Origin: Diadema antillarum
Taxonomy: Eukaryota
DNA: 64,000 nt
Assembly: GCF_040938485.1 (NCBI RefSeq)
Contig: NW_027271592.1
Location: 62,001-126,000, forward strand
Reading direction: 5' to 3'
Of this stretch, positions 30,221 through 40,798 are shown piece after piece. The notes beneath the pieces were generated by a model. It searched no databases. It was not told where the DNA came from and was given only the letters and a program-made list of their open reading frames with translations. Position numbers and translations under genes: made by a program. Every line of letters starts with the position of its first letter. Within the stretch, counting starts at the first letter, position 1.

Positions 30221-30466
30221 CTTGTGCTCCGTGTCTGTGCCATAGAGACCGGCAGACATTGATGTAATAGGCATCGCCCGTCGTGGCCACGCCCTGCACC
30301 CTGTAGTTGTCGGTCAGCTTGGAGAGAGGGGCGAGGTCGTACTGCTGTCCCCCCTCCCGGTAGCTGCACTCCACCACCTTGAATGGTGGGCAGGCCAGCG
30401 GGGTGGCCCACTCAAAGATGTAGGTGCAATCCGCACTCTCCTGGATGTAATGGGGTGACCCAATCC
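30221..30466 (-). CDS. IGF2R: CI-MPR exon, D9 end/D10 (GIGSPHYIQESADCTYIFEW...HRHGAQ), 1->1
   Basis: tag acceptor, GTGAGG donor. Confidence 0.95.
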
Positions 30467-33277: not shown

Positions 33278-33406
33278 CCTCCACATTTTCATCGCAGTAG
33301 AAGTTGATGGCTGTGGATCTCTGGTAGACAGTGTGGCAGGTGGAACCCTGGGTGTAGTTCAGCTTCAGAACACCGTTAGAGTAAGTCAGGTTTTTGTTGA
33401 ACAATC
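33278..33406 (-). CDS. IGF2R: CI-MPR exon, D9 (GLFNKNLTY...[20 protein letters not shown]), 1->1
   Basis: Near-identical to human [16 protein letters not shown]. Confidence 0.96.
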
Positions 33407-35071: not shown

Positions 35072-35291
35072 CTGCGTTCTTGAACGTCCCATCCGCCATC
35101 TTCTGGCAGCCGCCCACGGTGCCGCCGGCGCAGTCACCCTGGCCCGAGACCAGCGGGCCGCAGACGTTGATGTTATAGGTGTACTCGCTGGTGGTGACGG
35201 TGTAGTCCTGGGTCTTGCTGTACAGGGTCGACAGGTTGAACTCATACCCAAACTCTGGGACCTGGACGGAACAGTTGCCTCCCACCACTCT
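35072..35291 (-). CDS. IGF2R: CI-MPR exon, D9 (RVVGGNCSV...GGCQKMADGTFKNA), 0->1
   Basis: cag acceptor, GTGAGA donor. Confidence 0.94.
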
Positions 35292-35319
35292 CTGGTGTCA
35301 AAAGAAAGAAAGAAAGAAA

Positions 35320-36378
35320 CTAGATATATCGCTACGGCTACTGATATGCCTCCGCCATAATGCATGGTTCTCCTAATAGGTCTATAGTACAATGTCTTGA
35401 CAATGTGTGATGACAGTTTCACACAAGTGGCAAAATATTAAAATGACAGGTTTGACACAAATGTGCTGAATGTTCACTTTCCTAGAACTAGGTTCAATTG
35501 GATGAATGATTAAAATGTCAGAGTGCAGGTATTTGGGGAACTGATGATTTTTACTTGACTTTTGACCCTTTTATAAGTTTATGCATTGAGTAATTTTCAA
35601 GGTATTGAGAAAAAGTATAATTTCAGTATCAAATGGGAAAATAGCATTATCTAAACCTGGCCTTTGACCTTTGACCCCACAGTTCCAAAGAGAATCACTG
35701 TTAGGTTGAAAATGCATAAATATGTAAGTTTCATGATGATACCTTGAGTTACTTTCGAGATATGGAGGAAAAAGCGCAATTTAGCACTTTCACTTGACCT
35801 TTTACCTTTTGACCTTTGACCTTTCGGCAAGAAACTTCCCCCAAAATATATATTGGGTAATACATGCCATACATCAAGTTTTTAAAAAAAAAACCTTCAG
35901 GCATATTGCATTTTAAGGAAAGTAGAGATATTTTGAGGAGTTGACCTTGACCTTTGACCCCCTGACCTTTGACCCATGACCCCCAACTTTCCTAGATAAT
36001 CACTGCCCATCGGTACAAGCATATATACTAAGTCACACATGAAGATACCTTGAACCATTTGCGAGATATGGAGAAAAACATGAAATTTCAATTTTTTTTC
36101 ACAAAATAACCTGTGACCTTTGACCCTTGACCCTGTGACCCTAAAATCCAAACAAAGTATTATCCCCCAAGGATATACCCTCATACCAAGTTTGATGTAA
36201 AACCACCACACGGTTCTTGAGATATCGACAAAAACAAAACGGGACGGACGGACGTACGGACGTACGTACAGACGTACGGACGTACGTACAGACGTACGGA
36301 CGTACGGACGGATGGACGGACGGACGGACGACCCGAAAACATAATGCCTCCGGCCACTTCGTTGCGGAGGCATAAAAA
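35320..36378 (-). mobile_element. Helentron/DINE-1-like element, copy 2
   Basis: Nearly identical to 30808-31856, same orientation and same termini. Confidence 0.75.
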
Positions 36379-36550
36379 GATTGAATTGCAACTGATTGAC
36401 AAATCATTGACGTAAATAAATAAGTAAATATTTACGTCGATGTAGGACAATTTGTCAATCAGTTGCAATGAAAACATCTCGACGGAAGAATTTCATTTGA
36501 ATAATTACGCAGTACCCTCTGCATGCTATAAGGATTAGAACCAACACTTG

Positions 36551-36650
36551 CTGTCAGGTGGAAGCTCGGTGGTCTGGTGGAGATGACGCCTGTCCAGAGA
36601 TCAGGAGGTCGTAAGTTCGAATCCTGCTCGAGTATGTATGCCCATGTTTT
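36551..36650 (+). mobile_element. tRNA-derived SINE head
   Basis: tggtctggtgg and agttcgaatcc boxes, lying between two ~65-bp direct repeats (about 36434 and 36694). Confidence 0.5.
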
Positions 36651-38081
36651 TATCATGGCTACTACTAAAACACAGATCAATTCAGTGCTTATTCACGTTG
36701 ATGTAGGGCAATTTGTCAATCAGTGGCAATGAAATATCTCGACGGAAGAATTTCATGAATTTGAAAGATTGAATGATGTCCACAAATCAAGAGTAACAGC
36801 ATTGTGAAACAAAAATGCAGAGAAAGAAAGTGAGGACGAAGACACGGGGTGGGGGCGGGGGGTGGCATTGCATCAAACTATGGGAACTGTGCAGTCAATG
36901 GGGACCATCCGTGATTTCTTGGCTTTGATTGGCTGTGGAGAAGTGTTGCTATGGCAGTGGCATCAATTGCACAGTTACCATTAATTGTAAAGTTACCACA
37001 GTTTCACACACAGGGTCCAGATTTGGCATTCCCTGTGTTGTTAGGTTGTGATGTACAAGTACCTATTTGGTCTTAACATTTGGTGCTGTGATGCGAGTTT
37101 GTGTTGTACTTCAAATAATGCGCGTTTTTTGACATGTAATTCATAAAGGGATAGGTCACTTCTTTCAACAACAAAGTTTTCTGACTCAATGAGGGGCAAA
37201 CAGTCAACAAAAAAACAATTAATGACCAATGCCAATCCCACCTCAGGCTAGAGCTAGTACCGAATCAAATTTGCAGATTTCTGTCTTGATGGGCTTTAAG
37301 TCACAAGTGCATAGAAGTCCCAACAGTCTGCCTCCACGCATAACTTTAAATACACTAGGTACCTCTAACCATCAAGTGGCATAAAACATATTTCTGTGAT
37401 TCATTGCCAGATATTTCTACAACATTTGCAATATTTATTGTTTCAAAAAGGTTGAGCAGAATTCTCTTTCATTTCAGCTCTTTGTTGGCAATGAAATTTG
37501 TTTCCATTGCAAAATTCTAAGACGCATCATGATTGCCAAATGGATTCTCAAATTGGCAACAAATTTTAGAAGACTGAGGTTCCTGTCTGTCTCTCGTGTT
37601 GGCAGAGTTTTGTAAATTCACGAAGAAATATTCCATGCGACACTTGGTGCTCCATGGTTTTTGTCCATGGTTTAAACCATGGTTTCATTTGTACCACCTT
37701 CTTGAATTCAGGCCTTAGAATTTAACATTGTGCTTTTGCTGCTGATTAGTATGCAAAAGAGAACTACAAACACAGTCCTTTCATCCACATTCCTCATTTG
37801 TGAAGCCGACAGATCAAACTTGCGTATCTTCATCGTATTATAAGCATGGCAAACCTTGAATGAGACATTTCCTTTGATGCGTACTACAAAAAAAAAAAAA
37901 ATCCATCAGAGTAAAATACCATCACAGTGTCCTTATAAAATCGATCAGAGTAACATACCATCACAGTGCCCTTATGAAATTATTATGCTATATAATACTG
38001 ACATGAAACTGTAAAGAGACACCAAATATGTCAACAGTCGTTATGCCCGTAGTTTTACGAGAACTCCCAGACTCCTCTCAC

Positions 38082-38162
38082 CTGAAGTGGACATGCTGCT
38101 GGTGTCTCCCAGGAGAAGATGTACTCACATTCCGGTGTCTCAGTTTGGAACACCGGAGATCC
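38082..38162 (-). CDS. IGF2R: CI-MPR exon, D8 end (GSPVFQTETPECEYIFSWETPAACPLQ), 0->0
   Basis: 81 nt, tag acceptor, GTGAGA donor. Not in the ORF track in this frame. Confidence 0.94.
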
Positions 38163-38683
38163 CTACAACGAAACATGACGGGAGATAAGACAAAGTGGTG
38201 ATGTCTGAAGTTGCCAATTTGGAAAGCAGTTCCTATACGCACAGCTCTTACAAACCATGTGATGCACATTTTTTCTTTGTCGCTGAAAAAGGTCAAATCA
38301 TCAACAGAGATGCACATTCCAGTCTGGTTTTTATGATCCATTTCCAAGTTGCACAACTGAGTTGCTGGATATTTCATATTGGTAAAAAATGAAATAAATA
38401 AATCTGGAATATCTGCAGAAAGCCAGAGACTTAAGAATATTTTAGAAACAGATATAGTAGCAGATTCTTCAACATGGTATTATGAAGTACCAGGAGAATC
38501 AGACAACACACTGGCAGCACAAAAAGCATGTCGGGGCATGACTTTCATGCAATGTAAAGAGGACAAGGTATGGATAAAGACGTCTCATTAGCACCGGAAA
38601 TTACAGGAGAAACATAATGAGCAGCAATCTCCAGGAAGGCGATCACCAGATAGGAAAAAAAAATCACACAGGAATAATCTTAC

Positions 38684-38868
38684 CGGCGTGTCTGAGCACT
38701 CAAAGTTGATGCGCGTGCTGCGGTGGTACTTTCCGTGGCAGATGTCGCCATTCACGTATCGTATGCTGAGCGAGCCGTCGACGGCCGCTTCGGGCATGGC
38801 CTGCACGTAGCCCAGATTGAAGGTATCGCCGCTGTTGGGGCTGGTCTGACAAGCACCAATGGGTCCAC
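38684..38868 (-). CDS. IGF2R: CI-MPR exon, D8 (GGPIGACQ...CHGKYHRSTRINFECSDTP), 1->0
   Basis: ctgcag acceptor, GTAAGA donor. Confidence 0.95.
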
Positions 38869-39177
38869 CTGCAGAAAAACAGCACAGATATTTCTTTACA
38901 AAGCAATATACTGTGTGGTGCAAAATTATCTTTTTTTTAGGGCGTTTTTTTTTTTTCATGAATTTTGCAAGTCAGGTGCTTTTAGCGAAATTAAGGACAC
39001 ACAAATACATTGTATCATTAATCTGATCCCAACATGAATGTGACATGGCCACATACATTATTGGCATGCAGCACATAGCACATGAACAAAGTGCATGAGC
39101 CTGGCAAAACAGTTCAGCAGACATAGATCTTGGCACACCATTTTAGAAATATGTCTCAGCACGAGAATTAACAACAC

Positions 39178-39374
39178 TACTGTAAAAGTGGATATTTTCG
39201 TGCGACTAATTTTTCACGCTTGGTCGGGTAAGAAGAGTTTCGCGTGTTTTTAATTCCGCGGAATTAAAACATCACGCACAGGAACATATGGCTCGCAAAA
39301 ATTTTCGCGGTAGTTTCTAGTTGCGCGGAATGCACGAAAATTTCAACACCGCGAAAATTTCCACTTTTACAGTA
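39178..39374. mobile_element. Short relative of the TA-ended MITE
   Basis: tactgtaaaagtgga...tccacttttacagta. Degenerate relatives lie near 6870-7056 and 45390-45615. Confidence 0.7.
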
Positions 39375-39599
39375 TTTGTAAATTTCTTGCATTTTCGTTT
39401 TCTATGCTGGATCTCTACTTCTGCTCACTGAAAATAAGTGAATGATACAGATTTCTCTGTTCACTGCTCTATTCCATGATTGCAAATCTGGGACGTCCTG
39501 ATTAGACTCAATAGATCTATGACATATACAGTAGGCCATCAATTACTGTGGAAATGCTGTGTTGGAGTGATACATCTGTACCTCATGCTTGTGTAGTGT

Positions 39600-39850
39600 G
39601 ATACAGTTCAGTGTAGTGTAGTTCAGTGTAATGTAGTGTAGTGTAGCATAGTATACAAGTTGTAGTACAATTTAGTACACTGTACTATGGTGTAGTTTAT
39701 AGTATAGTATAGTAGTATACATGTAGTATAGTAGTATACATGTAGTATAGTATAGTAAAGTGTAGTGTCGTGTTATGTAGTGTAGTGCAGTGAAGTGTAG
39801 TGGAGTATAGTGTAGAGTAGTGTAGTGTTGTGTGTAGTGCAGTGCAGTGG
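39600..39850. repeat. (GTAGT/TAGTA)n pentamer repeat
   Basis: Visible directly in the sequence. Confidence 0.85.
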
Positions 39851-40102
39851 AATGTATTACCCATAGCCATGAAATGTTGTGTAAAGCAATATTGCAGTGC
39901 TGCGTAAAATGAGTATTGTACAATGTTGTGTAGCATAAGTTTGAATCAATATACACATGCAATTCGATGCTTTCCTTGACACATATTAAGCATATAGTGT
40001 TTTGCTTCTTTGTTTTTTTTTCTCCTTTTGTTTTAGTTGTTTTTCACAGTGATAAACTGCGATTCTAAGGTACACCACAGCTGCAAGGCAGCCACAACAT
40101 AC

Positions 40103-40417
40103 CTGGGCAGCTGCTGGCTGTAGTATCTCCCTTGTTGACCGGCCGACAGATGTTGATGTGATAGCTGAGCGTGTCGAACCCTGGCCTGGTGTCCACTGCC
40201 TCCCAGTTGCCTGTGTCCTTGGCCAGGGGTGAGAGGTCATACTGGTTGCCGTGGGCATCCGACACCAGGCAGTCCACGGATTCGGGCAGGCAGGCCAGCG
40301 GCGTCTCCACTTGGAAGATGAAGTGCTCGCCCTCCTGACGCACGAATGCGGGTCGTGGCTCGGTCTGGGAGGCATTGCGCCGGCACAAGAATGATATGAC
40401 TGTTGTGGCGTTCAGTG
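40103..40417 (-). CDS. IGF2R: CI-MPR exon, D7 end/D8 start (ALNATTVISFLC...NQYDLSPLAK...SSCP), 1->1
   Basis: Acceptor at 40417 or the in-frame alternative at 40447; GTATGT donor. Confidence 0.88.
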
Positions 40418-40798
40418 CTGTGTGAGATTGATGAAATCCAGAGCTGTCTGATGAGTGTTGATGTAACAAACACCCAGTCTCCTTATAGTAATTATTTGTG
40501 TATGTATTTTACAAACATTACTTCTTTCAGCAGAGTATATCCATACTGAAGCTGTGCAATATGAGTAAATATCACTAGCATTAGTACAGATGTATGCCTC
40601 ATTCACACAAAAAAAACCAACCACACAAAGAAACATACAAAAAATTGTAAATTCTTTAATTAGGCTGGCCTGTAAAGGTGCTGGTATTTGATTTATGTGT
40701 AGAGACATACTTTTTGTCCATGGACTGATCATAGAATTGGTAAGAGAAACAAGGAAAAGTAGAAATTAGGCGGTGCGTAATATATGTCCCCGCCGCAA

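What the first reader, a model, noticed from the sequence alone, without database searches (positions are those of the whole stretch)
38082..40417. Domain 8 also has a complete Q-R-E-Y signature, tandem to domain 9
Seen: GAC-Q (38846-38848), C-H-GKYH-R-STRINFEC (Arg 38720-38722) and QT-E-TPECE-Y (Glu 38139-38141, Tyr 38121-38123, in an 81-nt exon the ORF track misses). Recalled human D8 has GSCL and CGNQRFSTRI and is not a known lectin domain. Inference: D8 and D9 are adjacent sugar sites that could grip bis-phosphorylated glycans within one monomer.
Basis: partly seen in the sequence, partly recalled or inferred. Interest (0 to 1): 0.82.

Follow-up and report, generated by a model that had tools for sequence, protein, structure and literature searches.

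The report
Extra sugar pocket in urchin enzyme-sorting receptor
In this sea urchin, the eighth segment of the receptor that delivers enzymes to lysosomes keeps a complete sugar-binding signature that humans lack; it is an old animal feature lost in our lineage, but binding has not been tested.

Summary
[quoted passage not shown] The spliced D8 is 100% identical to residues 1061-1207 of the annotated Diadema setosum protein. Gln, Arg, Glu and Tyr sit at the stated codons and align with the essential residues of known sugar-binding domains; human and bovine D8 have Leu and Phe at the Gln and Arg sites.

The signature is not peculiar to this animal. D8 carries Q-R-E-Y in sea urchins, starfish, acorn worms, many molluscs, a nemertean, a centipede and cnidarians. 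It is lost in a crinoid, amphioxus, all vertebrates, scallops, Lingula and a scorpion. The full tetrad was found in no other domain class apart from the known lectin domains and D11.

D8 is also the most conserved of the 15 domains between Diadema and starfish, acorn worm or abalone. The model is a confident MRH (mannose-6-phosphate receptor homology) fold.

Binding is inferred, not shown. The D8-D9 clamp on one bis-phosphorylated glycan is unsupported, because the relative orientation of the two domains is poorly defined. No RNA reads were available for the 81-nt exon.

The parts
40103..40417 (-). Exon encoding the C-terminal strands of D7 and the N-terminal half of D8. D8 starts at V-D-C; its first Cys is at 40271-40269.
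   Evidence: AG/GT flanks. Pfam CIMR E=1.2e-20. Best PDB match is bovine D8, residues 1076-1137.
38684..38868 (-). Middle exon of D8. It carries Gln (38848-38846), the loop-C Cys-His (His 38737-38735) and Arg (38722-38720).
   Evidence: Aligns to human D8 (6z31 residues 59-112) and bovine D8 (1148-1202), where Leu and Phe replace Gln and Arg.
38082..38162 (-). 81-nt phase-0/0 exon encoding the last two strands of D8. It carries Glu (38141-38139), Tyr (38123-38121) and two Cys.
   Evidence: Unique best junctions 38684>38162 and 38082>35291. Pfam CIMR E=6.7e-5. Contained in the annotated Diadema protein. Four of four differences from a related genome are synonymous.
35072..35291 (-). First exon of D9, with Gln at 35105-35103.
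33278..33406 (-). Middle exon of D9, with Cys-His (His 33335-33333) and Arg at 33320-33318.
30221..30466 (-). Exon with the end of D9 (Glu 30440-30438, Tyr 30422-30420) and the start of D10.

Best explanation
[quoted passage not shown] D8 here is an intact MRH lectin domain. It has Gln1126, Arg1168, Glu1188 and Tyr1194 (numbering of the annotated Diadema protein) at the four mannose-contacting positions. It also has a His right after the loop-C Cys, as D9 does, and eight Cys for four disulfides, as D3 and D9 have. Inferred mechanism: D8 binds a terminal mannose-6-phosphate on the N-glycans of lysosomal enzymes, as D3 and D9 do. That would give invertebrate receptors extra sites (D8 and D11) and higher avidity for multiply tagged enzymes. 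Shown here: gene structure, residue identities, orthology, fold, and the taxonomic pattern (ancestral in animals, lost repeatedly, including in chordates). Inferred: that the pocket binds sugar, and which sugar.
For: Exons and codons. Identity to the annotated Diadema setosum protein: D8 147/147; other exons 93-100%. Alignment of the D8 Arg with bovine D3 Arg435 and D9 Arg1334, and of the His with D9 His1329 (6um1 numbering). Tetrad table: Diadema D3, D5, D8, D9 and D11 are QREY. D8 is QREY in 3 echinoids, 3 starfish, 3 hemichordates, oyster, abalone, octopus, a unionid, a nemertean, a centipede, Nematostella and a soft coral. Class frequencies: D3 94%, D5 96%, D9 86%, D8 32%, D11 30%, and 0% elsewhere. 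D8 is the most conserved domain between Diadema and starfish (77% against 34-68%), acorn worm (70% against 30-52%) and abalone (54% against 24-49%), and it has the shortest terminal branches. Where the site is lost, two or three of the four residues usually go together: vertebrates, amphioxus, crinoid, scallops. AF2 model: pLDDT 93.4, pTM 0.88. Best structural match is human D8 (TM 0.88/0.94, rmsd 1.4 A), followed by D9-10 and M6P-bound D1-3.
Against: There is no binding data for any invertebrate D8. The tetrad is neither sufficient nor strictly necessary. MRH domains of OS-9 and glucosidase II beta carry it and bind unphosphorylated mannose (general knowledge; both appear as weak hits). D15, reported to bind M6P in mammals (from memory), shows Val at the Arg column in my alignment. 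In mammals D8 is a packing hub that touches D6, D7, D9, D10 and D11 (PMC7015683), so high conservation could reflect packing, and the pocket could be occluded. The link between the His and the tetrad could not be separated from shared ancestry (only 2 independent pairs). No RNA reads were available.
Confidence: 0.6

Rival explanations
1. D8 keeps the four residues but does not bind sugar. In this reading the domain is conserved because it is the structural hub of the receptor, and the tetrad is retained through packing or folding constraints.
For: Mammalian D8 contacts five other domains (PMC7015683). D8 remains fairly conserved in amphioxus (54%) although the tetrad is gone there.
Against: Vertebrate D8 folds well with Leu/Phe or Val/Tyr at these positions (6z31), so the residues are not needed for the fold. 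They are kept from cnidarians to echinoderms and never appear in non-lectin classes. Losses tend to hit several of the four together.
Confidence: 0.2
2. D8 is a lectin with a different specificity, such as unphosphorylated high-mannose glycans or the Man-P-GlcNAc phosphodiester, rather than the M6P monoester.
For: The tetrad reads the mannose ring only. MRH domains of OS-9 and glucosidase II beta use it for unphosphorylated mannose (general knowledge; hits). Residues that contact phosphate could not be assigned here.
Against: Loop C has the same length as in D3 and D9 (Cys to Arg is 6 residues) and the same Cys-His start as D9. D8 has the eight Cys of D3 and D9. From memory, not checked here, the phosphodiester-preferring D5 lacks the cysteine pair that ties loop C to loop D. 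The window's D5 has no Cys at the position of D8's loop-C Cys.
Confidence: 0.15
3. One reading: the D8 and D9 pockets of one monomer bind the two phosphates of a single bis-phosphorylated glycan.
For: Both domains carry the tetrad, and only 9 residues separate the last Cys of D8 from the first Cys of D9.
Against: The orientation is not defined (pTM 0.61). Solved mammalian structures differ in the D8-D9 arrangement (TM 0.74, 0.51 and 0.49). No distance could be measured.
Confidence: 0.1
4. Annotation artefact: the 81-nt exon is not spliced in, so D8 lacks Glu and Tyr.
For: No RNA run was found. The exon is a multiple of three and could be skipped in frame.
Against: Skipping it would remove two invariant Cys and the last two strands. 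The homologous segment is present in every orthologue, including proteins predicted from Logan contigs of about 8 kb that encode about 2,400 residues and therefore look like transcripts. All four differences from a related genome are synonymous, while the adjacent intron carries 10 substitutions and an indel in 70 nt.
Confidence: 0.02

Closest known systems
Domain 9 of mammalian CI-MPR/IGF2R (high-affinity M6P site; PDB 6z30, 6z32, 6um1)
   Same: MRH fold; Q-R-E-Y at the same columns; loop C of the same length starting Cys-His and ending Arg-Ser-Thr; eight Cys.
   Different: It is a different repeat class. D8 falls with the even-numbered domains and D9 with D3 and D11. Binding is proven for D9 and untested for D8.
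Domain 8 of human and bovine CI-MPR (PDB 6z31, 6z32, 6um1)
   Same: True orthologue: best sequence and structure match (44% identity, TM 0.88/0.94, rmsd 1.4 A) and the same position in the protein.
   Different: Mammals have Leu, Phe and Gln (or Leu) at the Gln, Arg and Glu sites and no His after the loop-C Cys. Mammalian D8 is described as a packing hub and an IGF2 contact, not as a lectin (PMC7015683).
Domain 11 of invertebrate CI-MPR
   Same: A second domain that carries the tetrad in invertebrates and lost it in vertebrates.
   Different: D11 is still intact in amphioxus, whereas D8 is already lost there. The losses are independent in crinoid and scallops.
MRH domains of OS-9, XTP3-B and glucosidase II beta
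   Same: Same fold and tetrad (weak hits).
   Different: They read unphosphorylated mannose, are much more distant (15-21% identity), and are not part of a 15-repeat receptor.

Membership tests
CI-MPR / IGF2R orthologue | About 15 tandem MRH (CIMR) repeats | tested here: met
   15 HMM hits in the annotated Diadema protein, which maps to the window at 93-100%. Exons for D1 to D15 run from about 62.1 kb to 9.4 kb on the minus strand.
CI-MPR / IGF2R orthologue | Each repeat orthologous one-to-one to the mammalian repeat of the same number | tested here: met
   Domain tree: D1-D8 and D12 are each one clade with SH-aLRT 97-99, including D8 (98). D9 (6), D10 (94), D11 (94) and D15 (22) group without strong support. 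D13 and D14 are mixed because two proteins had only 14 detected domains, which shifted their index labels. Reciprocal search of D8 segments against the window gives D8 as best.
CI-MPR / IGF2R orthologue | Single transmembrane segment and acidic-cluster dileucine-type tail | tested here: met
   The C-terminus of the Diadema protein shows a hydrophobic stretch and ends with an acidic cluster followed by I-L. The tail exons lie at about 7.9 and 6.0 kb.
M6P-binding (P-type lectin) MRH domain | MRH beta-sandwich fold | tested here: met
   AF2 pLDDT 93.4, pTM 0.88. Foldseek matches to CI-MPR and CD-MPR structures.
M6P-binding (P-type lectin) MRH domain | Gln, Arg, Glu and Tyr at the four mannose-contacting columns | tested here: met
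   The Arg aligns with bovine D3 Arg435 and D9 Arg1334.
M6P-binding (P-type lectin) MRH domain | Cysteine pair tying loop C to loop D, as in D3 and D9 (eight Cys in all) | tested here: met
   Eight Cys, all in invariant or nearly invariant columns. The disulfide pairing itself is inferred.
M6P-binding (P-type lectin) MRH domain | Residues that contact the phosphate | tested here: inconclusive
   Loop C has the length of D3 and D9 and the D9-like His. Contacts cannot be assigned without coordinates. The His-tetrad link is not separable from phylogeny.
M6P-binding (P-type lectin) MRH domain | Measured binding to M6P or phosphomannan, lost on mutating the Arg | not testable with these tools
   Needs protein expression and binding assays.
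M6P-binding (P-type lectin) MRH domain | Pocket accessible in the context of the whole ectodomain | not tested
   No coordinates are returned. The mammalian hub role of D8 (PMC7015683) makes this a real question.

The most novel reading that the evidence does not exclude
The ancestral animal receptor had at least six sugar pockets (D3, D5, D8, D9, D11, D15). D8 is the only even-class repeat that kept one. It is also the slowest-evolving domain in invertebrates, so it may be a principal cargo site there. Chordates retired D8 first and vertebrates then retired D11. These two retired lectin domains are, with D6, the ones that embrace IGF2 in mammals. The growth-factor platform would then have been built on decommissioned sugar sites.
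Probability: 0.25. Interest if true: 0.7.

Novelty: new variant of a known kind. Interest (0 to 1): 0.5.

Why it matters
The accepted picture of this receptor, drawn from mammals, has sugar sites in D3, D5, D9 and D15 and treats D8 as a non-lectin spacer and hub. If invertebrate D8 (and D11) bind cargo, the mammalian layout is a reduced version of a richer ancestral lectin array. That would give a dated order of site loss along the chordate stem. It would also offer a natural template for adding sites to engineered M6P-binding reagents, and a testable link between loss of sugar sites and later gain of IGF2 binding. No paper noting this for D8 turned up in the open-access library that I could search.

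Tried and rejected
RNA evidence: the single run search found only four holders, none on record as RNA. Laid on 35200-40500, they were genomic contigs that include introns, about 95% identical (X1-X3) or closer (X4), so no splice joints could be read. The difference table was truncated, so exons 38684-38868 and 40103-40417 could not be scored for synonymous versus non-synonymous changes.

Independent-pairs test of the His against the tetrad: only 2 pairs on supported branches, so it was uninformative.

D8 as a sister duplicate of D9: rejected. D9 is the second-best match of D8 within the gene, but the tree puts D8 with the even-numbered repeats and D9 with D3 and D11 (the deep split has only SH-aLRT 88).

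Pocket distance and geometry: not obtainable, because the models come without coordinates.

Papers: Bochel et al. 2020 (human D7-11 structure) is not held. A search for D9 residue numbers found nothing relevant. My recollection that His1329 matters for D9 binding (Hancock et al. 2002) is therefore unverified.

The later word search with a full-length relative gave the named orthologues.

Full report
**What is there**

[quoted passage not shown] Exons for domain 1 lie near 62.1 kb and those for domain 15 near 9.4 kb.

The finding covers three exons: 40417-40103 (315 nt), 38868-38684 (185 nt) and 38162-38082 (81 nt). All have AG and GT flanks. The first begins in phase 1 and ends with one base of a Gly codon. 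The next two junctions are phase 0.

A search over candidate donor and acceptor sites, scored against the S. purpuratus protein, picked these junctions as the best solutions. It also picked 38082>35291 into domain 9. The junction 38684>38162 was the only solution.

[quoted passage not shown] Other exons of that protein map to the window at 93-100%. The window is therefore from Diadema setosum or a very close relative.

**Check of the observation**

- Gln 38848-38846
- Arg 38722-38720
- Glu 38141-38139
- Tyr 38123-38121

The middle exon matches domain 8 of bovine (6um1, 1148-1202) and human (6z31, 6z32) receptor best.

The D8 Arg aligns with bovine D3 Arg435 and D9 Arg1334 (6um1 numbering). The His after the preceding Cys aligns with D9 His1329.

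The ORF list misses most of the 81-nt exon because the listed ORF starts at an internal GTG.

**Is the 81-nt exon real?**

No RNA run was found. The four runs that hold the region are genomic contigs that include the introns, so splicing is not shown directly. Indirect evidence is good:
- The exon is part of the annotated Diadema model.
- The homologous segment is present in all orthologues. These include proteins predicted from Logan contigs of about 8 kb that encode about 2,400 residues, which look like transcripts.
- It encodes two invariant Cys and the last two strands of the fold.
- Pfam CIMR matches its 27 residues at E=6.7e-5.
- All four differences from a roughly 95%-identical genome (38103, 38133, 38136, 38142) are third-position synonymous changes. 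The 70 nt of intron just upstream carry ten substitutions and a 6-nt insertion.

**How common is the signature?**

I built an HMM of the repeat and read the four columns in every repeat of 29 named proteins, then in all fetched proteins.

| Domain class | Share with full Q-R-E-Y |
|---|---|
| D3 | 94% |
| D5 | 96% |
| D9 | 86% |
| D8 | 32% (57 of 180) |
| D11 | 30% |
| D1, D2, D4, D6, D7, D10, D12, D13, D14 | 0 of 805 instances |
| D15 | 0 of 115 (mostly Q-V-E-Y, in mammals too) |

In Diadema the tetrad is complete in D3, D5, D8, D9 and D11.

D8 has the tetrad in:
- sea urchins (Diadema, Strongylocentrotus, Lytechinus)
- starfish (Acanthaster, Patiria, Asterias)
- hemichordates (Ptychodera, Saccoglossus, Glandiceps)
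- oysters, abalone, other gastropods, Mya, a unionid and octopus
- a nemertean, a centipede and a crayfish
- the cnidarians Nematostella and Dendronephthya

D8 lacks it in:
- the crinoid Antedon (Q-Y-V-Y)
- amphioxus (M-Y-T-Y)
- every vertebrate sampled, from shark to primate
- scallops, Lingula, several chelicerates and isopods

On a D8 gene tree the intact state changes at least seven times. The homologue in the unicellular Capsaspora has the tetrad in 15 of 18 repeats. The simplest reading is an ancestral lectin site in D8 that has been lost repeatedly, once on the chordate stem.

**Constraint**

D8 is the most conserved of the 15 domains between Diadema and three other invertebrates:

| Compared with | D8 identity | Other domains |
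|---|---|---|
| Starfish | 77% | 34-68% |
| Acorn worm | 70% | 30-52% |
| Abalone | 54% | 24-49% |

It also has the shortest terminal branches of any class in the domain tree.

Sites conserved in at least 85% of tetrad-bearing D8s but in under 30% of the others are Gln66, Arg108, Glu128, His103, Arg31, Tyr39 and Pro141, in domain numbering. The His follows the loop-C Cys in 45 of 58 tetrad-bearing D8s and in about 3 of 121 others. This association could not be separated from shared ancestry.

**Structure**

The D8 model is confident (pLDDT 93.4, pTM 0.88). Its best match is human D8 (6z31, TM 0.88/0.94, rmsd 1.4 A), followed by D9-10 and M6P-bound D1-3.

The D8-D9 tandem has well-folded domains (pLDDT 93.3) but pTM of only 0.61. 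It matches the bovine pH 4.5 structure (TM 0.74) and not the human D7-11 crystal (0.51) or the IGF2-bound state (0.49). The pair looks hinged, and I could measure no pocket distance.

**Interpretation**

Most likely (about 0.6), D8 of invertebrate receptors is a working sugar pocket of the D3/D9 type, adding to D3, D5, D9, D11 and D15. The gene structure, residues, orthology, fold and taxonomic pattern are shown. Binding, and specificity for the phosphomonoester, are inferred from three features:
- the tetrad
- the D9-like loop C, with the same Cys-to-Arg spacing and the same Cys-His start
- the eight Cys

Cautions:
- The tetrad reads only the mannose ring.
- D15 shows that an aligned Arg is not strictly required.
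- In mammals D8 is a packing hub that touches five domains and, with D6 and D11, contacts IGF2 (PMC7015683). Conservation may therefore partly reflect packing, and the pocket might be covered.

**Relation to what is known**

The gene is an annotated orthologue, and the tetrad criterion is standard. A recent preprint uses it together with the Cys count to predict binding (10.64898/2026.10.22.760878). I found no paper noting a complete tetrad in D8 of any species, but only the open-access library could be searched.

The tree also suggests that odd-numbered repeats (3, 5, 7, 9, 11, 13) and even-numbered repeats form two groups (SH-aLRT 88). That would make D8 the only even-class repeat with the tetrad.

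**Verdict**

This is a new variant of a known receptor layout, of moderate interest, and it can be tested directly with a recombinant domain.

Noticed in passing
window 39178-39374: A short element with 23-nt terminal inverted repeats (39178-39200 and 39352-39374, 96% complementary) lies in the D8 intron. Contig depth there is about 10,000 times that of the flanking unique sequence, so it looks like a high-copy MITE.
   Followed up: partly
window 35200-36800 and 37500-37850: The intron between D8 and D9 holds other very high-depth stretches with many rearranged joints in the genomic contigs. These are presumably interspersed repeats.
   Followed up: no
window 39640-39830: A low-complexity run of CACTACA/TACAC-like units lies in the first D8 intron.
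   Followed up: no
whole gene: In the domain tree, repeats 3, 5, 7, 9, 11 and 13 group apart from 2, 4, 6, 8, 10, 12 and 14 (plus 1 and 15), with SH-aLRT 88. This hints that the array grew by duplicating a two-repeat unit. D8 is the only even-class repeat with the tetrad.
   Followed up: partly
D8 Arg column in orthologues: Chordates, the crinoid and scallops replaced the Arg with Tyr or Phe and kept an Arg one residue earlier (R-[YF]-S-T-R-I). This looks like a convergent change.
   Followed up: no
window D15 exons about 11818-11606, 11010-10900 and 9504-9418: D15 reads Q-V-E-Y, with no Arg at the canonical column. The same holds in almost all species, including mammals, where D15 is reported to bind M6P. 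The aligned tetrad is therefore not a strict requirement.
   Followed up: partly
protein P0177 (Capsaspora owczarzaki) and P0001: A unicellular relative of animals has an 18-repeat homologue with the full tetrad in 15 repeats.
   Followed up: no
protein P0002 (S. purpuratus XP_011660649): Two stretches of this model (819-868 with 924-973, and 1967-2035 with 2071-2139) map to the same window exons. The model probably contains duplicated exons from an assembly error, and it ends before D15.
   Followed up: no
protein P0180: The precomputed Pfam list of the Diadema protein has no fibronectin type II domain (PF00040), unlike most of the vertebrate orthologues listed.
   Followed up: partly
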